DNA of 64,000 bases from Octopus sinensis (taxonomy: Eukaryota), in the NCBI RefSeq assembly GCF_006345805.1, contig NC_042999.1, positions 124,000,001 to 124,064,000 of the forward strand, read 5' to 3'. Position 1 is the first letter of the stretch; each line of letters begins with the position of its first letter. Of the stretch, positions 9,780 through 62,489 are shown one piece after another. The notes beneath the pieces were generated by a model. The model had not been told where the DNA came from. It ran no database searches and saw only the letters and a list, made by a program, of their open reading frames with translations. Both the position numbers and the translations under genes were made by a program.

Positions 9780-11240
9780 GAGCTGCAAGCTGGCAGAATC
9801 ATTAACACACCAGCCAAAATGCTTGGTGGCATTTCATCCATCTTTACATTCTGGGTTCAAATTATGCCAAGGTCAACTTAGACTTTCATCATTTTGGAGG
9901 TGCTAAAATAAGTACCAGCTGAGCACTGGGGTTGATATAACTGACTTACACCTGCCCCTGAGCTTGCTGGCTTTGTGCCAAAATTTGAAATCAATATTTT
10001 TGGTATCGTGCGGGCACATGTCATAGAGCTCAGAGTGTTGCACTCATAATTGCAAAATTACAGATTTAATTCCCAGACTGTGTGGTGCATTTTGTTCTTG
10101 AGAAAACCACTTCATCTTAAGTTGCTCTATGATCACTTCAACATCTGATGTGTGGCTCACCATGCACCTATTCAGGCATAGTTGACTTGAATGAGGGAGT
10201 GAGATAATGTGTTGCACAAACATGTGATTACTGTCATCTGTGCAGGTTGTTCAGCAAGAAATTGCAGAACAATCTTTCACAAGCTCTAAGAGATTACCTT
10301 GCATATATTCTTGATGTAGAAGGTATACTAGGGGAGCAAGCTGTTAGAATCATTACCATGCTGGGCAAAATGCTTACCAGCTTTTCATCCATCTTTATGT
10401 TATCACTTCAAATTCCACCAAGGTCAACTTTGCCTTTCATTCTTTTGGGGGTTGATAGAATAAGTACCATCTGAGCACTAGGGTGAATGTAATCAATAAG
10501 CTTCCTCTCTCAAAATTGTTGGTCTTGTGCCAAAGTTTGAAACCATTATGTACAGGGTGTATTAGAACCAAGGATGCTGGCTTCAGATTTTGGCACAAGG
10601 CCAGCAAGTTTGGGGTAGGAATTAAGTTGATTACATCAACCCCAGTGTTCAACTGGTACTTATTTTATCAACCCCGAAAGGACGAAAGGAAAAGTCAACG
10701 TTGGCAGAATTTGACATTAGCACTGTATTTCTATCCCTTTGCATCCGCTATGAGAAAGATAAAGTCATTGTCTAGGCCCACTTTCTACTTTTGTACAGAA
10801 ATATCATCAATTTATTAATAATAAATATTCATAAGGTGGTGAGCTGGCAGAAACGTTAGCACACCAGGTGAAATGCTTAGCAGTATTTCATCTGTTTTTT
10901 TACATTCTGAGTTCAAATTCTGCTAAGGTCGACTTTGCCTTTCATCCTTTTGGGGTTGATAAATTAAGTACCAGTTTCGCACTTGCGTGGATGTAATCGA
11001 CTTAATCCATTTGTCTGTCCTTGTTTGTCCCCTCTGTGTGTAGCCACTTGTGGGTAGTAAAGAAATAGGTATTTCGTCTGTCTTTACATTCTGAGTTTAA
11101 ATTCTGCTAAGGTCGACTTTGCCTTTCATTATTTCAGGGTCGATAAATTAAGTACCAGTTACTTACTGGGGCTGATCTAATCGACTGGCCCCACTCTCCC
11201 CACAAAATTTCGGTCCTTGTGCCTAGAGTAGAAAAGAATA
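9780..11240. mobile_element. Cluster of tRNA-derived SINEs (family B in both orientations, one family C)
   Basis: Family B head GAGCTGGCAGAAACGTTAGC and core CCTTTCATCCTTT-GGGGT-GATAAATTAAGTACCAG at about 9780(+), 10330(+), 10580(-) and 10834(+). Family C at about 10015. Confidence 0.8.
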
Positions 11241-13690: not shown

Positions 13691-15259
13691 ATGTGAGTTT
13701 GTATGTATGTATGTACGTATGTATATACGTATGCAGGCATGTATGTATGTATGTATATGACTGGGTGGCTAACCCTTCCAGGGTTCATTCCTACTGGCTT
13801 GGTACTTGGGCAAATATCTTCGAGTGCAGTTTTACTTGCCCAAAAATTTTTGAAATTAAGCTTGATACAAATTGTGAGTGCTTGTCAAATGTGTGTCTGT
13901 ATGTGTATACATACACACACACACACGCACGCACATATATACGGTGGAGGTGCATAGCTTAGTGGTTAGGTAAGATTATGGTTTTGATTCCTGGACTGGG
14001 TGACACAGTCTGTTCTTGAGCAAAGTACTTCATTTCATGTTGCTCCAGTCCACTCAGCTAGCAAAAATGAGGGAAACATTTTCTCTATGGTAAATGCAGT
14101 GAATTTCCGTTTTAGCAATTGAAATAATGTCACAAACATATTTTAACTAACCTAAACTTTGCTTAAGTCTAAACACTGCTTGATGCTAATATTTTCTTAT
14201 ATATATATATAAAAGAAATAATTGAGATTCAATTGAATTAGTCATTTAAGTTGAAGCACCAAGCCAGTCCAGTATTATCCACACAGCCCTAAGGAAGGTG
14301 AATAAAATCAAAATAAGTAACAGGATATCAAATAGTGATGTAGTATGACTGTTTCAAGTGGCTCCATTTAATTTAACAATGCAATCATAACATCAATTTA
14401 AATGCAGTGCCATCTTCAGCTGCACAAATATATGGAATTTTAACAAGTAGGACACATTAATATAATTTTTCTCAAATATTTTAACACACCAAGAAGGTGT
14501 TGTTGATATGTTTATATATATACAATGAGCTTCTTTCAGCTTCCACTTACCAGATCCACTCACAAGGCTTTGGTTGGCCCAAGGCTATAGTAGAAAAGAC
14601 TTGCCTCAGATGTCAAACTGTGGGACTAAACCCAAAATCATGTGGTTGGAAAGCAAGATTCATACCACTGCCACATATGCAAAAGACATTTGTTTACAAC
14701 AGTTTCCATCACATAAAGATAATTGAAATGAGGATGATAGGCTCATACTTAGTAAAGTTATGCACTCATATTTTCTTTTAGATATCACATTTTTGTTGAG
14801 AGAAGGCAAGAGCCATCTGAAGAAGTCACAATTTGAGAGTGATGGCATGTACACCAGCAATACTGATTTCTATTGTTCAGCTGAAGGAAGCTTTCAGTTT
14901 ATGTCTGAATATTTGTCAGTTACATAACATTTTATTATTGATATGTGTGTTTAGAATGAAGACACAAATCAATGTCAGCTGTAGATATTAAACACATGGC
15001 AATTGTGCCATGAATTTAGCACTTTAATAACTCATACTGAGTTATCATGACTTGGCCAAACATATAATAAAATAGCCATAGAAGAATATGAACTCATATT
15101 TCAAGAGAAAATAGATTCATATCTTTTCCATTTGCCACTTCACCTCAGAGTTCTCTCCCTCTCTTTCTCTCTCTTTTTCTCTGTCCCCTTCTTTCTCTCT
15201 CACTTGCTCTTCTCTTCTTCTCTTTTCTCTCTCTCACTCTTTCAGATATATGTACATAT

Positions 15260-15314
<55 letters not shown>

Positions 15315-15367
15315 AGATAGATAGACAGATAGATCGATATATATATACATATATATATATTTCTTTA

Positions 15368-15590
15368 CTACCCACAAGGGGCTAAACACAGAGGAGACAA
15401 ACAAGGATAGACAAACGGATTAAGTCAATTACATCGACCCCAGTGCGTAACTGGTACTTAATTTATTGACCCCAGAAGGATGAAAGGCAAAGTCGACCTC
15501 GGCGGAATTTGAACACGGAACGTAATGGCAGACGAAATATGGCAACGCATTTCACCCGGCGTGCTAACGTTCCTGCCAGCTCACCACCTT
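15368..15590 (-). mobile_element. SINE family B
   Basis: Reverse complement of the family B head and core. Confidence 0.85.
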
Positions 15591-15596
15591 GAGATC

Positions 15597-16562
15597 TGGT
15601 GCATTATAATCCTGAAAGATTGTTTCCCTCCGGAAACAGTTCTGCAACCATAGGATGAATTTGATCAGATAAAATGCTTAAATAGACTTGACTATTAATT
15701 CTGCCATGAAGGGAAACCATTGCGCTGGTGGATTTCCAAGGCATAGCCCTCACCCCAGATCATCACAGATCCTCCTCCATGTTTAACAGTTGGAAGAAGC
15801 CAGTATGGGTCAAATTCTTCTTTTGGCTGTCTCCTCATGTATACTTGGCCAGTGGTTGCGAAGCATTTAGAGTTGGGTAAAAACCTATAGAATTGGTCCC
15901 TAGAGCAGTGGAAGAATGTTATTTTCTTGGATGAGTCATCCTTTACCTTATTTCCAACCACCGGCCAAGTATACATGAGGAGACAGCCAAAAGAAGAATT
16001 TGACCCATACTGGCTTCTTCCAACTGTTAAACATGGAGGAGGATCTGTGATGATCTGGGGTGAGGGCTATGTCTTGGAAATCCACCAGCGCAATGGTTTC
16101 CCTTCATGGCAGAATTAATAGTCAAGTCTATTTAAGCATTTTATCTGATCAAATTCATCCTATGGTTGCAGAACTGTTTCCGGAGGGAAACAATCTTTCA
16201 GGATGATAATGCACCAATTCACACAACTAAAGTTGTTACTGGATGGCACGAGGAATATTCTTGTGAAGTTGAATATCTTATCTGGCCACCACAGTCCCCA
16301 GATCTCAATATTATTGAACATTTATGGTGCATTTTAGAAAAACATGTAAGGAGTCGATATACTCTACCATCATCACTACAAGAACTGGAGGTTGTTTTAG
16401 CTGAAGAATGGACAAAAATTCCTTTGGAAACGATTCAAACTTTGTACGAGTCCATACCTCATAGAATTCAAGCTGTAATTACTGCCAAAGGTGGTCCTAC
16501 CCTATATTGAAATAAATTTGTTTAAAATTTTAAGGGGTTTCCATTATTTTGTCCAACCCTTG
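15597..16562 (+). mobile_element. Tc1 (DD34E) transposon 3' half with a 262-bp inverted duplication replacing its 5' end
   Basis: Motifs IFLDESSF, TVKHGGGSVMIWG, IFQDDNAPIH, WPPQSPDLNIIEHLW, AKGGPTLY*. 3' end TTTTGTCCAACCCTTG followed by TA. 15597-15858 is the reverse complement of 15955-16216. Confidence 0.9.
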
Positions 16563-17439
16563 TATATATATATATATCAATACATATGCCAACCCATGTT
16601 CCCATGGAAGATGGAAGTTAAATGATGAAGAGGATGTTGATTAATATATACATACATTAGATTATAACTTAGTTTTCCAACAACAGCATTGTTAAAGATG
16701 GATCGACACTGATTCTCACCTGACTTTTGGCCCCAAGACCATTGTCAGCCACACCTTGGTAATTGTTTCTGTTTGTAGGCTACACTTAGTGAGGGACTGA
16801 ATGCTAGGCATCGACAAACATTTCTAAGGCTCATTGAAATGTCATAATAGACAAACAAACAAGTATATATATACAAATATATGCATATATACAAATATAC
16901 AGATATATACATGTATATGTATATATACCCTCGCATAGTTGCCCAAGGCAGGGCATAGGAAAAAAAACACATTCAGTATAAAGTGACAGAGTAGGTATGT
17001 TATTAATACAGCATTATAAGCTAAGCATTGTAAAGAGGCAAAATTTTACCTGATGGTTTCATATGAAATTAGGTTTGCCTAAAAGTAAAGAATAATTTGA
17101 TAATAATCAGGCCTGTACTGGCTTGGATTTTTGGCACTGAAATGTCAAAAGAAAACATCTGGTTAATAAATCAAGGAAACCTTGTCATATACACTTATAT
17201 CTTTATTCACAAGCAAGAAGTTCATTTGACCAAACAACTGAATCCTCATCACTGAATGATGGAAATCTACTACCAACACATCTAAATGTGTGTGTGTGTG
17301 TGTGCATGTGTGTGTGTGCACGCACACACACACATGCATATGAACATGAATGACTGTGTAGTTAAGAAATTTTCTCTGCAAACACAAGATCTTAAGTTCA
17401 GTCCTACAGAGCAACACATTGGACACTTGCCTGCTACTA

Positions 17440-18632: not shown

Positions 18633-18872
18633 TTAAATTTAAATGTTGAAGTGTGTTTTTAAATGGCTTATAAGCACCTTCCACGCTGCAATTGTTTTTG
18701 TTTAAGCACACAATCTCAGATAAGGTCACTTGCTATGCAAGTACATCTCCATAATATATATATATATATATATATATTACGGAGATGTACTCGCATAGCA
18801 AGTGATTTGATCTGAGATCGTGTGCTGAAACGAAAACAATTGCAGCGTGGAAGGTGTTTGTAAGCACGGATT

Positions 18873-25069: not shown

Positions 25070-25574
25070 ATAATAATAATAAGGATGATGATAATGATGA
25101 TAATAATAATGCTTTCAAATTTTGGCAAAAGGCCAGTAATTTTAGGGTAGGGGATGAGTCGATTACATCGACCCCCCAGTGTTCAATTGGTACTTATTTC
25201 ATCAACCTTGAAAGGATGAAAGGCAAAGTCAGCTTTGGCAAAATATGAACTAAGAACAGGCAAAATTCTGCTAAGCATTTTGCCCGGATTGCTAACAATT
25301 CTGCCAGCTCAAGTAATAATAATAACAACAACAACAACAATAATAATAATAATCCTTTCTACTAAAGGCACAAAGGCTGAAATTTGGTAGGAGGGGACTA
25401 GTCAATTACATTGACCCCAGTATTTCACTGGTACTTAATTTTTTTACTCTGAAAGGATGAAAGGCAAAGCCTACCTCAGCAGAATTTGAACTCACAACGG
25501 GAAGATGGATGAAATACTGCTGAGCATTTTGCCCAGTGTGCTAGCAATTCTGCCAGCTCAACACCTTGATAATG

Positions 25575-25607
<33 letters not shown>

Positions 25608-26194
25608 GCAACAACAACAACAACAACAACAACAATAATAATGATAACAATAATAATAATAATAATAATAAGGATGATGATAATGATGATAATAATAATG
25701 CTTTCAAATTTTGGCAAAAGGCCAGTAATTTTAGGGTAGGGGATGAGTCGATTACATCGACCCCCCAGTGTTCAATTGGTACTTATTTCATCAACCTTGA
25801 AAGGATGAAAGGCAAAGTCAGCTTTGGCAAAATATGAACTAAGAACAGGCAAAATTCTGCTAAGCATTTTGCCCGGATTGCTAACAATTCTGCCAGCTCA
25901 AGTAATAATAATAACAACAACAACAACAATAATAATAATAATCCTTTCTACTAAAGGCACAAAGGCTGAAATTTGGTAGGAGGGGACTAGTCAATTACAT
26001 TGACCCCAGTATTTCACTGGTACTTAATTTTTTTACTCTGAAAGGATGAAAGGCAAAGCCTACCTCAGCAGAATTTGAACTCACAACGGGAAGATGGATG
26101 AAATACTGCTGAGCATTTTGCCCAGTGTGCTAGCAATTCTGCCAGCTCAACACCTTGATAATGATAATAATAATAATAATAATAATAATAATAG

Positions 26195-46446: not shown

Positions 46447-49433
46447 ATGGCTTCAAGAAAGTACTCAAGCAGATGCCAGAAACTAAAAATTAAGGAAAAG
46501 CAATCCAATGAAATTTCTAAATGTCAAAAACTATCAAACTATTTTACAATGTCAAGTAAATGTTTGTCAAACCTGCAACTGAAACAAGCCAAGCAAATGA
46601 AATCAGAGATAGTGCACAAACCACGAGTACTCTGTTTAGTAATAATCAACCTACTGCTGACACTTTTGATGCAGATGATGATCAGTGGTTAAGAACTTCA
46701 AGAAAAGAGAGAGCAGAAAAAGGCTACAGGAAGCAAATTTAGTGATTTCAAAGAATACAGTGACTTGGCTAACAAGTGATAATAATTTCATACAAAACTG
46801 TTTAATGCAAAACATCAGTTTTCTTTTTAAAATAAAAGTTAAAAAAAAACCCCAGATAATGTCTATACTGAATTCAACAATATTTACTAACAGCAAAATC
46901 GAGGTTTCCCAAACAAGTACTTTGAAAAAAAGATTGAAAAATGGTCAGACTGTGATGAGATCCTGGTTAGTTTACTCAAAGAGCAAACTCTTTTCTAAAT
47001 GCCAAATATCACTTACAATGGGTGGGTTTTCTGATTGGATGAATATATGCAGAACTCTAGAAAATCATGAAGACATATGGAACATAACAGGACGATGTTG
47101 AGCTGACTAACACAAAAATCAAATAAAACACTGTGGATCAGCAACTTGAGGAACAGTTGAGAAAAAACATGCAGCACTATTTTGAAGTACTAAAAAGAGT
47201 TGTAGCAGTTATAAAGCTTTTAAGTGAAAGAGGTTTAGCATTTAGAGGTCATGAGGAAAAGTGGGGCTCCCCAAACCATGGAAATTTCATGGGGGTTATT
47301 GAGCTTATTGTGGAGTTTGACCCATTTTTACTTGAATATTCAGAGAAATGTACAAATCCAAATCCATGTATAAAGAATTGATTGAAATCATGTGAAAGAT
47401 GAAGCGGTGAATCAGATCAAATACCTAGACACCAAATACTACTCAACTATTGTTGACTCTACACCTGACGGGACAAATGTTGACCAGCTGGTAATTGTGA
47501 TTTGATACTGTTATAATGGAAAGCCCTATAAGAGATTTTTAGCATTTTTGCCAATAGAAAACCATTCATCCACGATCTTGTTCAACAAAATAACTCACTT
47601 TCTGGGGGAGCATAAGCTTTTACTTGAAAATGTCCATTGCCAATTGTAGAATAATGCTTCCAACATGAAGGGCTCAGAGATAGAGCTACAAGCACTTCTT
47701 AAAAACATTAACAGGTACACAAACTGTGTACCATGTGCAAGCCATTCACTCAACCTTGTTGGAGAAAAGGCAGTGTCTATTGTACCTGAAGTTATTGATT
47801 ATTTCGATATCTTGCAGCAGCTGTATGTTTTCTTTTCTGAATCTCCTCAAAGATGTGGGATTTTAAACATACAGGGCAATCTAGTCTTTACTTTAAAGAG
47901 CACAAGTATAACTAGATGGTCTGGACACCATGAAGCAGTCCAAGCAATTAAAAATGGTTATAGGGATATTTTACAAACTCTCAAATATATGTTTGAAGAG
48001 TCAGAAGAGAAGCCTGAATGTAAGTGAGATGCAAAGAATTTATACCACGAGTTGGTAAAATTGGAACATGCTGTTTTAACAGTCATTTGGGAAGTAGTTA
48101 TGAATTGCTTTAACAAAACAAGTAAGAAACTCCAAACCCTTGGTTTTGATTTAATTGAAGGTTACCTTCTGCTAGCAACTTTGCTTTCATTTGTTAAAGA
48201 ACTACAAGAAAATTCAGCCGACAGGATTGAACACTATGAATCAGTAGCAAAATGTTTATGTGAATACATCACCTCACATTATTCTGATGTTTCCAAATGC
48301 ATTGTTACAAAGAAATTTGCAGATGGAACAAGTGATAGAGCTTCTTTGAAAGGGACTGAAAAATTTAGGATAGAAGTTCTAAATCAAGTCTATGACTGCT
48401 TGATAACCCGGATAAGGAAGAGGATGAACCCATATGAACAGATTGCGACAAGGTTCAAGTTTCTTTCAGAACTGATGAACAATTCAGAATATGATGAAGA
48501 CAGTATCAAACTTATAATATTGCATTACAAAGATGATATTGACCACAAATTGATAAAAGAGTGTTATCAGTTCAAAGAGGAAATCTTGAAAGATTAGGAA
48601 ATCTTGAAAGACAGAAGAAAACACACCATCTAGAATACAACGCACTGAAGTTCTTCAGCTTATTTATGAGCAACAATTAATTGAAGTGTTTCCTAATACT
48701 ACCACTGCACTTAAGCTGTACTTGACAATGCCTGTTATGAACTGTGAATAAGAAAGGAATTTCTCAAAGCTTTTCTTCATAAAGAATAAATTTCAATCTA
48801 CCATGACAGAATAGTGCTTAAATTCTTTATGCATATTGTCTCTAGAAAATGACATTGCAAGGAAGCTCACATATGACAAAACTGTAAGGGAATACGTTGC
48901 TACAAAAAAACAGAAAAGAGAGTATTTTGTATCATATGTATCTTAGATATAAGATTAATATTAGATTATATTAACTGATATTTGTTATGTTTTATGTCTT
49001 TATTCTATGATGCATCATGCATGTATATAACATTTCCCTAATTTTCAATCCCCATAACTCTAAAAGAATAAGGCATAGCCTGGAAAATATTTGTTCACAC
49101 TAGTGACATTGCGTATCACAATCTGAAATGTAGTGCTTAAATTTGTAAAGCAAATTGTGGTGATGTACCAAGGAACAATGATATCGACAAAGATATTGGT
49201 GATTACCCACACCACGTTTTTGATGGAAAGAGGGCTCACTGTCAGACTCATTTTTAAGGACTCTACATCACCACTCCACCAATTGGGCTATCAGAGCCTC
49301 TTGGATGGAATTCCTTGCAAGGCCACGAAAATTCTTTGACCCTTGCCGGATGTTACCCTACTGTTGCTGGTTGCAAAGGGGGGCCCTATAACATTTGAAG
49401 CTTCAGGGCCCCAATATTGTAGATCCACTACTG
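46447..49433 (+). mobile_element. hAT DNA transposon (ZMYM1/Tip100-like transposase), decayed
   Basis: GLAFRGHEE...NHGNF, IVDSTPD, NASNMKG, CASHSLNLVG, SITRWS and a C-terminal FPN...LTMPV...ERNFSKL block. Many stops and frameshifts. 3' end GGGCCCC...TAGATCCACTACTG; no matching 5' TIR found. Confidence 0.9.
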
Positions 49434-53094: not shown

Positions 53095-53645
53095 ATGCTA
53101 GCAAGTCCGTTGGATGTGCAATGTGCAACAGAGTAGAAGAGTTTTAAGAGAAAAATTGGGTATAAGGAGCATCAGATGTAGTGTGCAGGAGAGAAGACGG
53201 TGCTGGTATGGTCATGTGATGCATATGGATGAGGACAGTTGCATCAAGAAGTGCCAATCTTTAATTTTTGAAAGAACATGTGGAAGAAGTAGACCCAGGA
53301 AGATGTGAGACAAAGTGGTGAAATGTGATCTTCAGATGTTCAGTCTCGTGGAGGCAATGACAAATGACTGAGACTTCTGGCGAATTTCTGAGCTTGAGAA
53401 GACATGTCAAACTAAACGAAGTTATGGTCATGGCCAGTACCGGTGACATGTGAATGGTACCTGTGCCAGGGACTCATGACAGGCATCCATGCTGGTGATG
53501 CCTAAAAGGTGCCCAGTACACTCTGTGTGATGGTTGGCTTTAGGAAAGACATCCAGCTGTAAAAAGCAAGCCAAAGTTGACTGGAGTCTGGTGCAGCTCT
53601 TCAGCTTACCATCTCTAGTCAAACCATCTAATGATAATGATGACT
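53095..53645 (+). mobile_element. RTE-clade LINE 3' fragment
   Basis: REKLGIRSIRCSVQERRRCWYGHVMHMDEDSCIKKC...RSRPRK followed by the RTE 3' UTR. Confidence 0.8.
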
Positions 53646-53664
53646 GGTCAGACACTGACCAGTT

Positions 53665-54330
53665 AAAGGTGGGCTGGCAGAAACATTAGCATGCCGGGCG
53701 AAATGCTTAGCAGTATTTTGTCTGCCACTACATTTTGAGTTCAAATTCCGCCAAAGTGGACTTTGCCTTTCATCCTTTCGGGGTTGATTAAACAAGTACC
53801 AGTTATGCACTGGGGTCGATATAATCGACTTAATCCATTTGTCTGTCCTTGTTTGTCCTCTCTGTGTTTAGCTCCTTGTGGGTAGTAAAGAAATAAGATA
53901 ATGATGACTGTTGGACTACAAAAATATCTTGTCCAGAATAACAGAAAATTACTATTCTATGTCCAGCATTCATTTGCTGCACATCACTTTGCAAAAGATC
54001 ATACTGATCATCTATTTAAATTGCTAATATTTACAAATATGCTTATTTTCATTTGACAAAAATTTGTGTACATGTGGCTGTTTTTGTTGTTGTTGTTGTC
54101 TGCCTCTTGTTATAAATGTTCAGTTATCATTATTACAATGATAATTATGATGGCGAGCTGGCAGAATCATTAGCACACCAAGCATTTTGTCCGTCTTTGT
54201 GTTCTGGGTTCAAATTTCACTGAGACTAACTTTACCTTTCATTCTTTCAGGATTAATGAAGCAAGTACCAGTTATGCACTGAGGGTGATGTAATCAACTA
54301 GCCCCCTCCCCAAAAATTTCAGACCTTGTC
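53665..54330 (+). mobile_element. Two family B SINEs (about 53665-53900 and 54150-54330)
   Basis: Family B head and core motifs. Confidence 0.8.
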
Positions 54331-54822
54331 ATTATTTTCTTTGCACATATCTGAAGTTATTTCTTTTTTCTCTGTGACATTAGATTTCTTATTTTTCTCT
54401 TTCTTTCTTTCTTTTCATACAATCAATGCAAATATTTTTTCCACAAAGTTTGCAGCAGTGGTGGGATGCTTTGGTTTATGTCAGTCCAACCACCACTGTT
54501 GTCAAAGAAAGTGCCTTTTTCCTACATCCCCAAGACAAAAACCATACAAAAATATGAGTGTGTGAACTGTTTTACAAATATAAAGATGTAAAATGGAGGA
54601 ATACATACTTTCATTATTCTACCTGAGGGCAAAACTGAAGAGGACACTAAAACAGTTCCAAAGTCTTCTATTGGTAAATAATTATCCAAAGAAACTTTCT
54701 TTCATTGAATACAATCAAAGTAAATTCAGTTCCTGTACACAACCAATCCAAACACATTCATGCAATCCAAATCACAAATAATAATAATAATGATAATAAT
54801 AATAATAATAATGATAATAATT

Positions 54823-57800
54823 ATCGTAGCACCAAAATGTTTTTGGAAACTAAAAGGAAAACTAAATCAGTATACCAAATCGCTTGTCCTATGGTTAATC
54901 TGGAAGCGCGTCCCCCAGGGAAGAGCCAGCCTGGGATCGAAAAGTCATCAACTGGCACAAACTCTTCTCTGAATACGGACATGGATGGTCACTTGAACGG
55001 GAAATCCCCCAACTCGAGCCCTCCAAGTTCACCACCACAACCACCACAGAAAGAAAAATGTAAGCGGAACAAATGGACCCGAGAAGAGTATAAAGAAGTA
55101 ATATACGCTTATTACTATGCATTAGGTAGGCCATCTCAAGAGAGACACACCGCAAACTCTTACAGTATATGGAGAACACGGAATCAAGACAGTAGGCCCT
55201 ATTTGGACGAGAACAAATTAGCAAATGTGAGGAGGGATATCTTTAGAAATAACAGACTCACAGACAGTGAAATAAGCGCGATCAAGCACGCAACGGAAAA
55301 TGACATAAATATAAGACACAAGGGAAATGAAGAATCAGATGAACAGTATAGCCCGCCACGAGGCTTAATTGAAAGACTGCCATCTGACCAAAGTACGCAA
55401 AGGCCTGAAGATACAAGAAATTCTATTGTACCAGTTAAAGATAGCCAGGAAAACGAAAAAACAACAGTAACTGAAGATCTCGCATTTGCTGAAGAACACA
55501 GAGAGTCTATGGCAGAAATGAGGCAGAAAATCCTGAATACGCTTGAAGTTGTAAGACATACAAGTATGAATGATAGAGAACCACTTCATAAACTCTCAAA
55601 TACAAACCAAAATAAAAAACAAATCCAAATTGGCAACTATGTAACAAATGAAATAATACGAGAATTAAAACCTGATTTTACTGAGTTAAATGAAATTATT
55701 TACGCTTCTGCTAGGGCAATTGAAACCAGCTGTATGCCCCCAAAAAAACAAAGAAAACAAAACCTGGGAAGAAATCAAACCTGGAGAAGTAAAATTGAAA
55801 AAGAGATTGAATTTATGAGAGGGGAAATATCAATATTAAATGAACTAATATGTGGAAATGATGTAAGATCCAGAACAGGAAGAAAGATGAAGAGAAAATT
55901 TGGATCCTCACCAAGAGAACTGATATCAATAAAAGAAACGCTGAAACAAAAAGTCCAAGCAAAAGGCCAAAGAATACGAAGATTTGAGAAGAGAAACAAG
56001 TTTTACAAGCAAAATAAGCTGTTCACATCCAATGCCAAAAAGTTCTACAGAGAAATAGGGAAGGAGAAAGTAACCATTGAAGACCCCCCTCCCATGGAAG
56101 AAGTTCAAAACTTTTGGAAAAGGATTTGGAGTGACAAGAAGACGTACAACATAAATGCAGACTGGATTATACAAACTGAAGGATCCTACCAAAATTTACA
56201 ACAACAAGCATGGGAAGACATCACAATAGCAGACCTAAGAAAGGCACTCACGAAGGCCCATAATTGGAAATCCCCCGGTAAAGATAGGGTGCCGAATTTC
56301 TGGCTCGCATCGCTCCCATGCGCACACGGTAAGCTAGTTCAGCTGCTCAATGGAATTATGAGAGACCCAAAGAAAACACCTGAATGGTTAGCAAGTGGCA
56401 TTACTTACCTACTCCCAAAGAATAACGAAACCAACCTTCCAAAAAACTATCGGCCTATAACCTGTCTATCCACCACGTATAAAATCCTAACATCTATCCT
56501 GGCGGAGAAAACATATGCATTCATGGAGAAGAACGATATTTTCCCCATTGAACAAAAAGGGTGCCGCCGAGGCTCTTACGGATGCAAAGATCAACTGCTA
56601 ATCAATCGTATGATCCTTGAGAACTGTCACAACAAGCGCAGAAATCTCAGCACCGCATGGATTGGCTATAAAAAGGCCTTCGACAGTATACCGCATCCAT
56701 AGATCTTGAGATCGCTGGACATCTTCAAAATTTCCCCTGTGATTTCAAACTTCCTGAAGCACAATATGTCGTTGTGGAATACGAATCTCCAATTGTACCA
56801 CTCTAATGGAGTACTTGCCTCAGAAAATATAAACAACAACTGTGGAATTTTTCAAGGTGACTCACTTTCACCTTTAATATTCTGTATAGCCCTAATACCC
56901 CTTACAAGTGAATTAAACAGAACAGGGTATGGGTATAAAATTGCCAATAAAAAAATAAGCTATCTATTTTATATGGATGACTTAAAACTTTATGGTAAAG
57001 ACAATAATGAACTTGAAGGCCTATTGCGCACCATGAAAGCATTCAGCGATGACATCGGGATGGAGTTTGGACTTGAGAAGTGTGCCAAGGCCACTTTCCA
57101 GAAAGGGAAAGTGAAGACCACAAATTCAGTCTTGTTAGATATTGACACAGTCATAATAGAGCTTGAGCAAGAACAAACATACAAATATTTAGGGATAAAT
57201 GAAGGCTCTGGTATTCAGCATACAAGCATGAAAGAGAAGATCAGGAAGGAATGTTATAGGAGAGTTCGTGCAGTCCTGAAATCTGAACTAAATGCACGTA
57301 ACAAGGTGTTAGCTATAAATTCCTTAGCAGTTCCAGTTGTTACTTATAGCTACAATGTGTTGAACTGGAATATGAGTGAAGTAAAGAATATAGATAGAAA
57401 AATACGCAAGCTGCTGAGTTGTAATAGGATGCACCACCCAAAGGCAGACGTAGATCGCCTTTACCTTCCCAGAGCCCAAGGAGGTCGAGGCCTGATCCAA
57501 TTTGAACTAGCTTACAAAACAACCACAATTGGACTGGCCAAATATCTCGAAATATCGAATGACTGGATGCTAAAGCTCGTGGAAAATCACGAGAGACGAA
57601 AGAAGCTTCATTCTATCATCAAGGAAAGCAAAAAATTTGCTATTGATCTCGTGCAGGATACCCAAACTGAACAACCCGAGGGAAGTACAGCAACTATTGT
57701 TGCAAAGAAGGTGAAAATGATGGCAATGAAAAAAGCGCACGAGCAATTGGCTGATAGGTGGGAGGAGAAACCTCTGCACGGCAAATATGTGACCCGCAGC

Positions 57801-58705
57801 AAACAAGCTGATGTTGACCAGAAGCAAACCCATCAGTGGCTGCGGAGCTCAGGGCTAAAAGCAGAGAGCGAAGATTTCATCCTGGCTGCTCAAGACCAAA
57901 GCCTATTAACCCGGAACTACCAGGCCAATGTGATGAAAAATGGAGCAGACCCAAAATGCTGATTCTGCAACGACATGATTGAAACAGTGGACCACCTAAT
58001 CTCTGGATGTAAAGTCTTAGCACCAGTGGAGTATAAATTAAGACATGACAGAGTTGGCCAATATCTCCACTGGCTAATAAGTCGGCATTACAATATCAAA
58101 ACTGCCGACAAGTGGTATAATCACCACCCTGAGGCTGTAACTGAAGGAGAAAATGTAACCATTCTGTTGGACTTTCCAGTACATACAGACCGAACCATCA
58201 AGGCCAATAAACCAGATATTGTTGTGAAAGACCAAAACAATAAAGTTTGCTTATTGATCGACATGAGCATCCCCTGTGATCATAATATCTCAGCGAAAGA
58301 GTTTGACAAGCTCAGAAAATATGAAGACCTACTCATTGAAATTGAGAAAATGTGGCATCTCAAGGCGGTTACAATACCAGTGATCGTAGGAGCACTAGGA
58401 ATGATCAAGAAGGGAACCGAAAATTATATGAGAATGATCCCTGGCTTATCATCCCTGCAAGAAGTGCAAAAGATTGTCTTAACTGGTACATCACATGTAT
58501 TGAGAAGAGCATTGTCGATGTGAGAACTGTTGCTGCTCATGTATTTTAATTTAACTTTAAAAAAGAAAAAAAAAAAAAATGAACGAACTACTGAGTTTGG
58601 TTTAATGGCCTACCAATATACACTATGAGTTTCTTTGCCCTAGGAGTCGGGAAGACACTCGGCAAGAAATGGAAGAAAATTTGAAAGAAGAAAAAAAAAG
58701 TATTA
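54823..58705 (+). mobile_element. Near-full-length R4/Dong-type (RLE) non-LTR retrotransposon inserted in (TAA)n
   Basis: Single long ORF with RT, CCHC and PD-(D/E)xK endonuclease motifs. (AAT)n tracts at 54779-54822 and 58706-58768. Confidence 0.95.
54837..58523 (+). pseudogene. 1228-codon RT/RLE polyprotein ORF with two in-frame stops
   Basis: The three ORF-track segments share one frame. Motifs KWTREEY, KSPGKD, PITCLSTTYK, QGDSLSP, YMDD, C*FC...DHLISGC, RHD, KPDIVV...IDMSIP. Stops at 56700-56702 and 57960-57962; WIGYKKAFD has G where Asp is expected. Confidence 0.9.
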
Positions 58706-60314: not shown

Positions 60315-60406
60315 ATATGTAATTGTTAAAGAGGACAACAAACGTTGAGGCAAGGCAAACATCTCAAGTCACATACATTATTATTATTATTGGAAAAAGA
60401 TTCAAA

Positions 60407-60462
60407 GTCTTACAGGTGTTTCTGGGATATCCCAGAGTATGGAATATTCCATCATCGAAGAT
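60407..60462 (-). ncRNA. Decayed hammerhead-like fold in the left arm
   Basis: Minus strand: TCGATGA TGGAATATTCCA tactc TGGGATATCCCA GAA ACACCTGT A AGAC. Confidence 0.45.
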
Positions 60463-60607
60463 AAATAGGAAAAACGAGAGTGGTATAGATTAATGAAATG
60501 ATGACATAGAGGAGCTTTTATGCTTCTTTTTTCATCTCCTTATTTCTTTTCTCCTGTCCTCTATGTCATCATTTCATTAATCCATACCCTTCTAATTTTC
60601 CGTATTT

Positions 60608-60663
60608 GTCTCCAATGATGGAATATCCCATACTCTGGGATATCCCAGAAACAGCTGTAAGAC
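60608..60663 (+). ncRNA. Hammerhead-like fold in the right arm (inferred ancestral core CCGAUGA)
   Basis: Stem I GTCT/AGAC, core CCAATGA, 12-bp stem II with one mismatch, GAA, palindromic stem III ACAGCTGT, GUA triplet. Confidence 0.6.
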
Positions 60664-60897
60664 TTTGAATTTTTTCCAGTAATAATAATGTATATGACTT
60701 GAGATGTTTGCTTTGCCTTAACATTTATTGTCCTCCTTGACAATTATATATCCACTATATTGGAAATTTTCATTGGCTCCATAACAGCCGTCTCAGCTAT
60801 AACCTTGGTGCCCTAGTAATCCATTACAGCATTTACCTAGTGTATCTAATCATTTAGATCACCTGTGAATCAAACCCCAATATTTTGTATATATATA

Positions 60898-62451
60898 CAG
60901 CCTTGGTCAAAAGTATTCGGCCACCCCAATGTTTTGGAGTTCTGCTGTCTCAATGTTAATGAAACTCATGCACATGGTAGATTATGGTATATTTCACAAT
61001 ATACATTAGTTTTAATATCTGGCTGACCCTCCTTTCGCACGAATTACCACTTTTATACAGTTAGGCATTGAATCAACTAGCTTCTTGCAAGTGCTAAGTG
61101 CAATTTTACTCAATTCTTTTCTCAACTGTTGGTACAAATGCTCTTTATTTTTAATTGCAGTGTTCCTGATAGCTTCATCAAGAGTTCTCCATAGGTGTTG
61201 GATTGGATTTAGATCAGGACTTTGAGCCGGCCAGTCCATGGGAATAATATCTAGTTTCTCAAACTACTGACGAGTATTCTTTGCTGTATGGCACGGGACC
61301 TTGTCCTGTTAAAAAATAACACTGTTTTTGAACACTCCTGGATGCAATTTAGCAATTGATGGCTCTAAAACATCCGATAACATAGAAACATAGGTAGCTG
61401 AATTCATCCTTCCCTGACATAAAAACATTTCTACGGGTCCTGTGGCATACATGCAGGCCCACACCATGATAGAACCACCCCATGTTTTACGGTTGGTACC
61501 AGACATTCAGCCTTAAATGCTTCCCCAACTCTGCGATGCACGAAAGTTGCACCAGATGTACCGAAAACCAGAGTAAAAACATAAAAAATAATATTATCTT
61601 TATGTTGGATAATTTTTTATATATTTTGGCCAAGAAACCAGTTACATTAAGTTTATATGTTGATTGAACAAATGTACTATCTTACATCATAGTTACTTTT
61701 ATCAGACCCTATGACTTTCGACCATTGCTCACTGGTCCAATTTGAGTGGTTTTCGGCCCACTGAAGACGTTTTTCCATATTCACTTCAGAAACCCCTGGC
61801 TTCTTCCTGGCTTTACAGCCTTTCAGACCATACTCTGTAAGCCTTCTTCTAACAGTTCTGGTTGATATTTGTGAAGTACTTGCTTCGTTGAAGTCCACAC
61901 AGAGCTCTGACGATGTTTTCCTCCTGTTTCTGAGTGACTGACGGATGATAGATCTATCCTCTCAAGGTGATGTAACCTTTTTTATACCTGTTCTTTGTAT
62001 TGTCTTTGCATCTTTTGTCTCTCTGAAGTGCTTGAGAGTCGTTTGCACCACACATCAAGAACATTTCATCTGATGAGCGAGTTGCCTTTGAGATATTCCA
62101 TCTTCACGATGAGCTATGATATGACCTCGTTCACACTCACTCAACTCCCTTGTTTTAGGCATTTTACTGTTTATTAACTATATCAACGACATATTTTAGC
62201 ATAAAACTCTGAAATAATCAAGGAAACATAAGTTAATATAATTTAATTTTGGACGCTCGTTTTACTCATAATTGGTAGCATATGTACAGTACAGTATAAA
62301 AGCAGTAATTGATGCTAAAGGAGGGTCAACCAGATATTAAAACTAATGTATATTGTGAAATATACCATAATCTACCATGTGCTCAAGTTTCATTTACATT
62401 GAAACAGCAGAACCCCAAAACATTGGGGTGGCCTAATACATTTGGCCAAGG

Positions 62452-62454
<3 letters not shown>
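60898..62454 (-). mobile_element. Tc1 (DD34E) transposon with long TIRs, full length but decayed
   Basis: TA|CAGCCTTGG...CCAAGGCTG|TA, TIRs of about 140-160 bp. Motifs TVRRRLTEYGL, WGGSIMVWACM, WPAQSPDLNPIQHLW, AKGGSARY*. Confidence 0.92.

Positions 62455-62489
<35 letters not shown>

What the first reader, a model, noticed from the sequence alone, without database searches (positions are those of the whole stretch)
15597..16216. Near-perfect 262-bp inverted duplication inside a Tc1 transposase (Mu-killer-like hairpin)
Seen: 15597-15858 mirrors 15955-16216 with three mismatches by my count, around a 96-bp spacer that is itself transposase sequence. The 5' end of the element is missing. The arms look much more alike than the decayed ORF is to an intact transposase, so the inversion is recent or homogenised. 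Established: maize Mu killer is an inverted duplication of a transposon whose hairpin RNA silences the family in trans. Inference: read-through transcription here could give siRNA against this Tc1 family.
Basis: partly seen in the sequence, partly recalled or inferred. Interest (0 to 1): 0.7.

Follow-up and report, generated by a model that had tools for sequence, protein, structure and literature searches.

The report
Repair-scar hairpin in a dead transposon
A decayed, 5'-truncated Tc1-type transposon carries a real, recent 262-bp inverted copy of its own middle part; the junctions look like a DNA-repair accident tied to a neighbouring SINE insertion, and nothing shows that it works as a silencer.

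Summary
Arms 15597-15858 and 15955-16216 are 262 bp, ungapped, with 3 mismatches, around a 96-bp spacer of transposase sequence. This is the longest and cleanest inverted repeat in the window.

The element is the 3' 704 bp (aa 128-343) of a ~1.2-kb Tc1-like transposon with DD36E spacing. Its 5' ~490 bp are absent from the whole window. Both arms share a +4-bp indel, a -2-bp indel and 12 substitutions against two relatives, so an already decayed copy was duplicated locally. All 3 arm differences are derived in the left arm.

The junctions suggest the origin:
- The inner joint has 4-nt microhomology (GTTG/CAAC).
- The outer joint carries a 6-nt filler templated 84 nt further along the Tc1. The 11-mer CCAGATCTCAA occurs only at these two places in 64 kb.
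- The filler abuts the exact 5' end of a full-length SINE.

Best reading: one snap-back, template-switching repair event, probably during SINE integration, which also deleted the Tc1 5' part.

The Mu-killer analogy holds for structure only. There is no promoter, no terminal repeat in the arms, no other family copy nearby and no expression data. This is a known kind of structural variant, of low to moderate interest.

The parts
15145..15357 (.). Microsatellite block, (TC)n, (AT)n and (ATAG)n, abutting the SINE 3' end. Possibly the left part of the (TA)n tract into which the Tc1 originally inserted.
   Evidence: Tandem Repeats Finder; sequence. The matching (TA)7 on the other side of the Tc1 starts at 16563.
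15358..15590 (-). Full-length ~233-bp SINE-like retroposon. Its head AAGGTGGTGAGC... is at 15590 and its 3' end ...GTAAAGAAATA at 15358. It points away from the hairpin.
   Evidence: Alignment with two other full-length copies, 10833-11065 and 53668-53895. It keeps 13 of 17 CpG sites against 5 and 6 in the others. No tRNA or Rfam call.
15591..15596 (-). 6-nt filler (GATCTC on the minus strand) between the SINE head and the left arm. It was copied from Tc1 positions 16301-16306.
   Evidence: The 11-mer CCAGATCTCAA (15589-15599 minus) occurs in the window only here and at 16298-16308 plus; 0.03 expected by chance.
15597..15858 (-). Left arm: the new, inverted copy of Tc1 positions 15955-16216.
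   Evidence: It shares the +4 bp and -2 bp indels and 12 substitutions with the right arm. All three arm differences are derived here.
15855..15858 (.). Inner junction microhomology GTTG. It is at once the reverse complement of the right-arm start CAAC (15955-15958) and the collinear Tc1 sequence preceding the spacer.
   Evidence: BLAST to L001 and L002 extends to 15855/15856. The alignment shows L001 CGTTGCAAAGCG against window GTTGCGAAGCA. L002 has ATTG there, so the overlap is 3-4 nt.
15859..15954 (+). Spacer / loop: Tc1 transposase sequence (about aa 128-159, includes the first catalytic D in FLDESSF), collinear with the right arm.
15955..16216 (+). Right arm: the original Tc1 segment (about aa 160-246, ends in the DDNAP motif). 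It carries two frameshifts.
   Evidence: It has the ancestral state at all three arm differences.
16217..16562 (+). Remainder of the Tc1 remnant: transposase C-terminus (open to the stop at 16508-16510) and the 3' terminal sequence ...GTCCAACCCTTG.
   Evidence: ORF 16166-16510; Pfam DDE_3, E = 1.3e-16; alignment to L001 and L002.
16298..16308 (+). Donor site of the outer-junction filler: CCA (microhomology with the arm end at 16214-16216), GATCTC (copied), AA (shared with the SINE head).
16563..16564 (.). TA next to the Tc1 3' end (expected target dinucleotide), continuing into (TA)7.
   Evidence: Sequence; alignment of the 3' ends.

Best explanation
The hairpin is a scar of one complex DNA-repair event in an old, already decayed Tc1-like (DD36E) transposon copy.

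Proposed sequence of events:
1. A break inside the element was resected.
2. The exposed 3' end of the minus strand folded back on itself through 4 nt (CAAC on GTTG), leaving a 96-nt loop.
3. It copied 258 nt of its own strand (259-262 nt if the overlap is 0-3 nt).
4. It slipped 84 nt forward through a CCA microhomology and copied 6-8 more nt.
5. It was joined, through an AA overlap, to the exact 5' end of a SINE.

The simplest way to have a DNA end that coincides with a SINE's 5' end is that this end was the SINE cDNA made during its integration. On that view the SINE insertion, the loss of the Tc1 5' ~490 bp and the inverted duplication are probably one event.

Shown: the anatomy, the shared decay of both arms, the microhomologies and the templated filler. 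Inferred: the order of the steps, the polymerase, and the coupling to retrotransposition.

No function is indicated. If a read-through transcript ever crosses the locus it would form a 262-bp double-stranded RNA. In an animal, and especially a cephalopod, that is more likely a substrate for ADAR editing or a source of piRNA than a Dicer-type silencer of Tc1.
For: Local duplication of a decayed copy: both arms share a +4 bp insertion, a -2 bp deletion and 12 substitutions absent from relatives L001 and L002. No other family copy is in the window.

Inner joint: GTTG overlap.

Outer joint: CCAGATCTCAA occurs only at the junction and 84 nt downstream of the arm end in the Tc1, with 0.03 expected in 64 kb. 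This is a templated insertion flanked by microhomologies, as described for polymerase-theta-type and foldback repair (PMC4912351, PMC11724301).

SINE involvement: the SINE is full length and its head begins exactly at the joint.

Timing by CpG decay: the SINE keeps 13/17 CpGs and the arms keep 5/6 since duplication. The Tc1 had already dropped to 3 of 11 CpG sites before duplication (Fisher p = 0.02 for SINE vs Tc1, p = 1 for SINE vs arms).

A second case: the SINE copy at 53668-53895 has a clean 14-bp target duplication plus an 18-nt filler holding a perfect 9-bp snap-back hairpin at its 5' junction.

Copying errors possible: all 3 arm differences are derived in the new (left) arm. This fits error-prone copying but is not significant (p = 0.25 two-sided).

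Precedent: small inverted duplications (median 284 bp) with 1-15 bp microhomology are the commonest inversion-type variant in human long-read data (PMC12350158). Experimental LINE-1 integration produces target-site inverted duplications and foldbacks (PMC11702581).
Against: The SINE shows 16 private differences in 233 bp against the two other copies, about 10 of them outside CpG and partly clustered. That is far more than the 0.6% per arm. Unless these differences mark a subfamily, the SINE is older than the duplication and the coupling fails. More copies could not be obtained.

A 262-nt snap-back tract is much longer than typical polymerase-theta insertions (median 7 bp, PMC4912351), so another polymerase or a replication-fork template switch may be responsible.

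The focal SINE has no recognisable target-site duplication. Its 3' side is buried in microsatellite, so the hallmarks of target-primed reverse transcription cannot be shown.

The 4-nt inner microhomology depends on inferring the ancestral sequence from relatives; L002 supports only 3 nt.

No read-level confirmation of the structure was possible.
Confidence: 0.6

Rival explanations
1. The same foldback / template-switch origin, but unrelated to SINE integration. A replication-fork template switch (FoSTeS/MMBIR type) or ordinary break repair joined the new arm to a SINE that was already there, or the SINE arrived later.
For: The SINE's 16 private differences in 233 bp suggest it may be older than the arms. 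Small inverted duplications with microhomology arise without retroelements in humans (PMC12350158).
Against: It needs the break end to coincide, within about 2 nt, with the natural 5' end of a full-length SINE. CpG decay puts the SINE and the duplication at similar ages, both much younger than the Tc1. A later insertion would leave the rest of the arm upstream of the SINE, and it is not there.
Confidence: 0.2
2. A Mu-killer-like trans-silencer. Read-through transcription yields a hairpin RNA whose small RNAs silence active members of this Tc1 family.
For: The hairpin would be extremely stable. 33 of 242 arm 21-mers match the open-frame relative L001 exactly. Inverted duplications of transposons do start silencing in maize (PMC3440606; bioRxiv 10.1101/2020.01.07.897926).
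Against: No promoter or gene context was found. The arms lack the terminal repeat and 5' region. No other family copy is in 64 kb and no intact near-identical copy was found. There are no expression or small-RNA data. Molluscs show no dedicated endo-siRNA pathway (PMC12479628), if the host is one. Hairpin-capable palindromic repeats are common in this window, so hairpin potential alone is not distinctive.
Confidence: 0.07
3. An assembly or sequencing artefact: a chimeric foldback read, or a strand-displacement amplification chimera.
For: Foldback chimeras with microhomology are known artefacts of some library methods (own knowledge). No reads were available to check.
Against: The structure is internal to a contiguous 64-kb window with unique flanks. 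The arms differ at 3 sites, including a CpG-to-TpG change. The design is asymmetric, with a 96-bp spacer and a multi-step outer junction ending at a SINE head. The window has no N runs.
Confidence: 0.05
4. Two independent Tc1 insertions, head to head or nested, later trimmed by deletions.
For: Tc1 elements often insert near each other (own knowledge).
Against: Both arms carry the same two frameshifting indels and 12 substitutions not seen in relatives. Both arm ends are internal to the transposase, with no terminal repeat or TA. The inner joint is a microhomology joint.
Confidence: 0.02

Closest known systems
Small inverted duplications formed by microhomology-mediated template switching or foldback (human long-read structural variants, PMC12350158; yeast foldback insertions, PMC11724301; polymerase-theta snap-back synthesis, PMC4912351)
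   Same: Size class (262 bp against a human median of 284 bp). Short microhomology at the joints. A templated filler copied from nearby. Inverted orientation next to the source with a short spacer.
   Different: The tract is much longer than typical polymerase-theta or yeast foldback insertions (5-34 bp). Here one joint is the 5' end of a retroposon.
Target-site rearrangements made during LINE-driven retrotransposition (deletions, inversions, inverted duplications, foldbacks; PMC11702581)
   Same: The retroposon 5' end sits at the joint. Target DNA was lost (the Tc1 5' part). Target DNA was duplicated in inverted orientation. There is microhomology at the 5' junction.
   Different: That work used human LINE-1 in cultured cells. 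Here the element is a SINE of an invertebrate-type genome, the hallmarks of target-primed reverse transcription cannot be read on the 3' side, and the coupling is inferred.
Maize Mu killer (PMC3440606) and Ac/Ds inverted duplications that trigger silencing (bioRxiv 10.1101/2020.01.07.897926)
   Same: A partial inverted duplication of a DNA transposon's transposase gene that could give a long hairpin RNA.
   Different: Mu killer includes the terminal repeat and the 5' part of the gene, gives a ~4 kb hairpin, is transcribed from a flanking gene, and has a demonstrated heritable effect. Here the stem is 262 bp of the internal catalytic region, no promoter is evident, and there is no evidence of RNA or effect. 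Plants also have an RNA-directed DNA methylation pathway.
DD36E / Incomer family of Tc1/mariner transposons (PMC6875036)
   Same: ~1.2-kb element, ~343-aa transposase, 36 residues between the second D and the E (read), short terminal sequence, TA at the end. Spider and frog relatives are among the hits.
   Different: No phylogeny was run. Only the 3' 60% of the element is present. The paper lists no molluscan hosts.

Membership tests
Mu-killer-type hairpin silencer locus | Inverted duplication of part of an autonomous transposon | tested here: met
   262-bp arms, 3 mismatches, 96-bp spacer.
Mu-killer-type hairpin silencer locus | The duplicated part includes the terminal repeat / promoter region and the 5' part of the transposase gene (PMC3440606) | tested here: not met
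   The arms correspond to aa ~160-246 of 343. The 5' ~490 bp of the element are absent.
Mu-killer-type hairpin silencer locus | Transcribed through from a flanking promoter | not testable with these tools
   No RNA data. No gene-like ORF within about 5 kb. The neighbouring SINE points away.
Mu-killer-type hairpin silencer locus | Small RNAs from the arms and heritable trans-silencing of active family members | not testable with these tools
   No small-RNA or genetic data.
Mu-killer-type hairpin silencer locus | Active, near-identical target elements in the same genome | tested here: inconclusive
   None in the 64 kb. The closest public relatives are a 5'-truncated open frame (L001, 90.7% nt) and a frameshifted copy (L002, 87%), both from unnamed metagenome contigs.
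Tc1/mariner transposon (DD36E / Incomer-like) | DDE_3 transposase with a D..D..E triad and 36 residues between the second D and the E | tested here: met
   Pfam PF13358, E = 1.3e-16. 75% aa identity to aa 128-343 of an intact 343-aa protein, without gaps. The spacing was counted from DDNAP to NIIEHLW.
Tc1/mariner transposon (DD36E / Incomer-like) | Terminal inverted repeats at both ends, flanked by a TA duplication | tested here: not met
   Only the 3' end (…CCCTTG|TA at 16562-16564) is present; the 5' end is missing. This is a remnant, not a complete element.
Tc1/mariner transposon (DD36E / Incomer-like) | Groups with Incomer elements in a transposase phylogeny | not tested
   No reference Incomer sequences were fetched.
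Microhomology-mediated foldback / template-switch inverted duplication | The inverted copy lies next to its source, with microhomology at the joints | tested here: met
   GTTG at the inner joint; CCA and AA at the outer joint.
Microhomology-mediated foldback / template-switch inverted duplication | Templated filler copied from nearby sequence | tested here: met
   GATCTC plus flanking microhomologies form an 11-mer found only at 16298-16308, with 0.03 expected.
Retrotransposition-associated target-site rearrangement | The joint coincides with the retroposon's 5' end | tested here: met
   The SINE head AAGGTGGTGAGC starts at the joint, as in two other full-length copies.
Retrotransposition-associated target-site rearrangement | Endonuclease target motif and/or target-site duplication or deletion at the 3' junction | tested here: inconclusive
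   The 3' end of the SINE runs into ~210 bp of microsatellite and no duplication is recognisable. Loss of the Tc1 5' part fits a target-site deletion but is not proof.
Retrotransposition-associated target-site rearrangement | Retroposon and rearrangement have the same age | tested here: inconclusive
   CpG retention agrees: 13/17 for the SINE against 5/6 for the arms. Non-CpG private differences of the SINE disagree unless they are subfamily markers.

The most novel reading that the evidence does not exclude
An integration accident of one mobile element (a SINE) built a hairpin gene out of another (a Tc1/Incomer-like DNA transposon). That hairpin is transcribed and feeds small RNAs (piRNA or Dicer products) or ADAR-marked double-stranded RNA that restrain the Tc1 family. 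This would be an animal, possibly cephalopod, counterpart of maize Mu killer, made by retrotransposition. The second SINE copy with a 9-bp snap-back filler at its 5' junction hints that this SINE's integration machinery makes such foldbacks repeatedly.
Probability: 0.05. Interest if true: 0.65.

Novelty: new member of a known kind. Interest (0 to 1): 0.25.

Why it matters
As it stands, this is a well-preserved single-locus example of how short inverted duplications arise. Every joint is still readable: 4-nt foldback priming, an 84-nt slip with a 6-nt templated filler, and a join to a retroposon 5' end.

It suggests that retroposon integration in this genome can leave foldback scars of very different sizes, 9 bp and 262 bp within the same 64 kb.

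That matters for two reasons. Such scars are one route by which genomes acquire long hairpin-forming loci. They are also easy to mistake for assembly errors or for purpose-built silencers.

If the locus were shown to be transcribed and to yield small RNAs against an active Tc1 family, it would be a rare animal parallel to Mu killer. Nothing here shows that.

Tried and rejected
Independent copies of the locus:
- Exact-product look-ups gave nothing on record for the window ORF 16166-16510, the junction-spanning ORF 15695-15976(-) and the outer-junction ORF 15525-15653.
- A degenerate inner-junction pattern had 0 hits in the metagenome contigs.

More SINE copies to date the insertion:
- A conserved 19-mer found 14 metagenome loci, but none is a real SINE copy.
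- A full-text search for SINE sequence strings in papers found nothing.

Host identity:
- The reverse-transcriptase search gave only unnamed ENA hits.
- The hAT search named both Octopus species (75-80% aa, partial) and the catshark Scyliorhinus torazame (74% aa, near full length).
- An octopod host is therefore likely (35% GC, microsatellite-rich, and a SINE that I recall from octopus genomes) but not proven.

RNA-family checks:
- Rfam gave MIR821 hits on both strands of the hairpin at 128 bits against a gathering score of 249. I rejected these as generic long-hairpin matches.
- ARAGORN and Rfam do not recognise the SINE as tRNA-derived.

Alternatives rejected:
- Two independent Tc1 insertions: rejected because both arms share the same private indels.
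- A foldback or MITE-type mobile element: rejected because there are no terminal repeats or target duplication at the arm ends.
- The nearly intact LINE at 54705-58523 as the SINE's partner: the SINE has no BLAST match in the window beyond 54294, so no 3'-end similarity to the LINE (which ends near 58523) was seen.

Full report
**1. Observation**

The repeat finder gives arms 15590-15858 and 15955-16223, 96 nt apart. Pairing base by base shows the true duplication is 15597-15858 against 15955-16216. That is 262 bp without gaps and with three mismatches (15608/16205, 15741/16072, 15851/15962). Similarity collapses immediately outside both ends.

It is the longest and cleanest inverted repeat in the 64 kb. 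Transcribed as RNA it would fold at -530 kcal/mol, against -174 +/- 7 for shuffled sequence. The window contains no N runs.

**2. What the element is**

- The plus-strand sequence from 15855 to 16562 translates, after bridging two frameshifts and one stop, into the C-terminal 216 residues of a Tc1-type transposase.
- Pfam finds DDE_3 at E = 1.3e-16.
- The remnant aligns without gaps to residues 128-343 of an intact 343-aa protein at 75% identity.
- Counting from the D of DDNAP to the E of NIIEHLW gives 36 residues. With an element size of ~1.2 kb and ~343 aa, this matches the DD36E/Incomer family (PMC6875036). I ran no phylogeny.
- The 3' end is ...GTCCAACCCTTG followed by TA at 16563-16564.
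- The closest DNA relatives are two short metagenome contigs. L001 is 90.7% identical over 735 bp, with an open but 5'-truncated frame. L002 is 87% identical and frameshifted.
- BLAST of both contigs against the window finds no trace of the element's 5' ~490 bp and no second copy of the family.

The spacer (15859-15954, about aa 128-159) and the right arm (about aa 160-246) are collinear with the rest of the element. The right arm is therefore the original and the left arm is the added, inverted copy.

**3. The arms are a local copy of an already decayed element**

Against both relatives the two arms share a 4-bp insertion (GTGA), a 2-bp deletion and 12 substitutions. They also share the loss of most ancestral CpGs, with 3 of 11 CpG sites left. 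This rules out two independent insertions.

At all three positions where the arms differ, the right arm has the state seen in L001 (and in L002 at two of the three) and the left arm is derived. One of these is a CpG-to-TpG change. Three out of three on one arm is not significant (p = 0.25 two-sided). It leaves open that some differences are copying errors made when the arm was synthesised, in which case the event could be even younger than 1.1% divergence suggests.

**4. The junctions**

Inner joint. The last four bases of the left arm, GTTG (15855-15858), are two things at once. They are the reverse complement of the first four bases of the right arm (CAAC, 15955-15958). They are also the Tc1 sequence that naturally precedes the spacer: L001 reads CGTTGCAAAGCG, and BLAST homology runs to 15855. 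L002 has ATTG there, so the overlap is 3-4 nt.

Outer joint. Read on the minus strand it is ...ATAATGCACCA | GATCTC | AAGGTGGTGAGC... The 11-mer CCAGATCTCAA spanning it occurs in the window only here and at 16298-16308 in the Tc1, 84 nt beyond the arm end. Chance expectation is 0.03 occurrences in 64 kb, and no shuffle gave two. So:
- CCA is microhomology with the arm end (16214-16216).
- GATCTC is a templated filler copied from 16301-16306.
- AA overlaps the next partner.

That partner is the exact 5' end of a full-length ~233-bp SINE-like retroposon on the minus strand (15358-15590). Its head, AAGGTGGTGAGC, is defined by two other full-length copies.

**5. Mechanism**

These features fit a single foldback (snap-back) event on the minus strand. 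The steps below are inferred; the anatomy is shown.

1. A break occurs in the Tc1 near 15854/15855.
2. Resection of the plus strand exposes the minus strand.
3. The minus strand's 3' end ...CAAC pairs with GTTG 96 nt upstream on the same strand.
4. Synthesis copies 15959-16216.
5. The end dissociates and re-anneals through CCA 84 nt further on.
6. It copies GATCTC(AA).
7. It then pairs with, and continues on, the DNA end that carries the SINE.

Written out, this reproduces the observed sequence exactly.

Repeated anneal-extend-dissociate cycles with short microhomologies and locally templated fillers are the described behaviour of polymerase-theta-type end joining and of foldback repair (PMC4912351, PMC11724301). 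Those tracts are usually 5-34 bp, so a more processive polymerase or a fork template switch may have made the 262-nt tract.

Small inverted duplications of this size are ordinary. In 1,019 human long-read genomes they are the commonest inversion-type variant, with a median of 284 bp, mostly with 1-15 bp microhomology, and are attributed to replicative mechanisms (PMC12350158).

**6. Is the SINE part of the event?**

For:
- A DNA end that coincides with the natural 5' end of a full-length SINE is what a completed SINE cDNA provides. For an unrelated break it is an unlikely coincidence.
- On the CpG clock the SINE (13 of 17 sites kept) is indistinguishable from the arms since duplication (5 of 6 kept). 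It is clearly younger than the Tc1 before duplication, which had 3 of 11 left (Fisher p = 0.02). The other two SINE copies keep only 5 and 6.
- The SINE copy at 53668-53895 has a clean 14-bp target duplication (GATAATGATGACTG). Between that duplication and its head lies an 18-nt filler containing a perfect 9-bp/3-nt-loop snap-back hairpin, ACTGGTCAG-ACA-CTGACCAGT, partly built from the target duplication itself. This is the same kind of 5'-junction foldback in miniature.
- Both sides of the structure end in (TA)n (15337-15359 and 16563 onward). That fits a Tc1 that sat in a TA microsatellite and lost only its 5' part when the SINE integrated.
- Experimental LINE-1 integration produces target-site deletions, inverted duplications and foldbacks through resected ends (PMC11702581).

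Against:
- The SINE has 16 private differences in 233 bp relative to the two other copies. About 10 are outside CpG and they are partly clustered. Unless these mark a younger subfamily, the SINE is older than the arms.
- I could not obtain more copies to decide this.
- The SINE's 3' junction is buried in microsatellite, so no target-site signature can be read.

I put the coupling at roughly 55-60%. I put a microhomology-mediated foldback origin, with or without the SINE, at about 80%.

**7. Function**

Nothing in the sequence indicates one.
- The element's own 5' end, where a Tc1 promoter would lie, is missing.
- The SINE points away from the hairpin.
- No gene-like ORF lies within about 5 kb.
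- The neighbourhood is a mosaic of retroposons, a LINE, a hAT remnant and microsatellites.
- Other hairpin-capable palindromic repeats occur in the same window, at 18666-18865 and 60395-60675. Hairpin potential alone is therefore not distinctive.

A transcript crossing the locus would certainly form double-stranded RNA. 33 of 242 arm 21-mers match L001 exactly, so trans-targeting is physically possible. But no autonomous near-identical copy is known.

The host is probably an octopod. This rests on hAT relatives named from Octopus species (although equally from a catshark), on 35% GC, and on my own recollection of this SINE from octopus genomes. That recollection is untested. If the host is a mollusc, a survey of 32 molluscs found no evidence of a dedicated endo-siRNA pathway and abundant piRNAs (PMC12479628). 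Across animals, double-stranded RNA from young inverted repeats is the main ADAR substrate (PMC9989829). The more likely fate of any transcript is therefore editing or piRNA processing, not Mu-killer-style siRNA.

**8. Comparison and verdict**

The Mu killer analogy is structural only. Of its defining features:
- The inverted duplication is met.
- Inclusion of the terminal repeat and 5' region is tested and not met.
- The presence of active, near-identical target elements was tested and is inconclusive.
- Transcription, small RNAs and trans-silencing cannot be tested here (PMC3440606).

The locus is best filed as a new instance of a known kind: a microhomology-mediated inverted duplication, probably retrotransposition-associated, in a dead DD36E Tc1-like element. 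An assembly artefact is unlikely, given the three arm differences, the asymmetric spacer, the multi-step joint and the unique flanks, but only reads can exclude it.

Interest is low to moderate. The value lies in the unusually legible junctions and in the hint that this SINE's integration repeatedly leaves foldback scars.

Noticed in passing
window 53626-53910: The SINE copy at 53668-53895 has a 14-bp target-site duplication (GATAATGATGACTG). Between the 5' duplication and the SINE head lies an extra 18 nt containing a perfect 9-bp stem / 3-nt loop hairpin (ACTGGTCAG ACA CTGACCAGT). This is a small snap-back filler at the 5' junction.
   Followed up: partly
window ~47300-48597 (+): A decayed hAT / ZMYM1-like transposase (DUF4371 + hAT C-terminal) has its best named relatives in both the catshark Scyliorhinus torazame (74% aa over 99% of 401 aa, many copies on chromosome-size scaffolds) and Octopus bimaculoides, O. 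sinensis and O. vulgaris (75-80% aa, partial). This is a candidate horizontal transposon transfer between a shark and octopuses.
   Followed up: no
window 15855-16562: The Tc1-like remnant has 36 residues between the second D and the E, which is the DD36E / Incomer spacing. The paper that defined the family lists vertebrates, insects and arachnids but no molluscs (PMC6875036). If the host is an octopod, this extends the family's range.
   Followed up: partly
window 15358-15590: This SINE copy keeps 13 of 17 CpG sites, which looks young. Yet it has about 10 private non-CpG differences from the two other copies, several clustered within 7 nt (alignment columns 94-100 and 125-127). This may reflect a subfamily difference or error-prone synthesis; it is unresolved.
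   Followed up: partly
window 60888-62464: Inverted repeat with 174-nt arms (91%) separated by 1229 nt, with weak Tc1-like similarity inside (61458-61523, 62300-62342). It is probably another Tc1/mariner element with long terminal repeats.
   Followed up: no
window 18666-18865 and 60395-60675: Two palindromic, MITE-like repeats. One has 100-nt arms (90%) around a (TA)n centre. The other has 119-nt arms (89%) with a 43-nt spacer. Hairpin-forming repeats are common in this region.
   Followed up: no
window 54705-58523 (+): A LINE-type reverse-transcriptase element with three long consecutive ORFs (665, 418 and 182 aa). A 97%-identical relative sits in a public ENA contig, so the element may have been active recently. 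No similarity to the SINE 3' end was seen.
   Followed up: no
window 25157-26158: A ~589-bp unit containing SINE-like segments is present twice in tandem (25157-25569 and 25746-26158), next to long (ATT)n/(GTT)n tracts.
   Followed up: no
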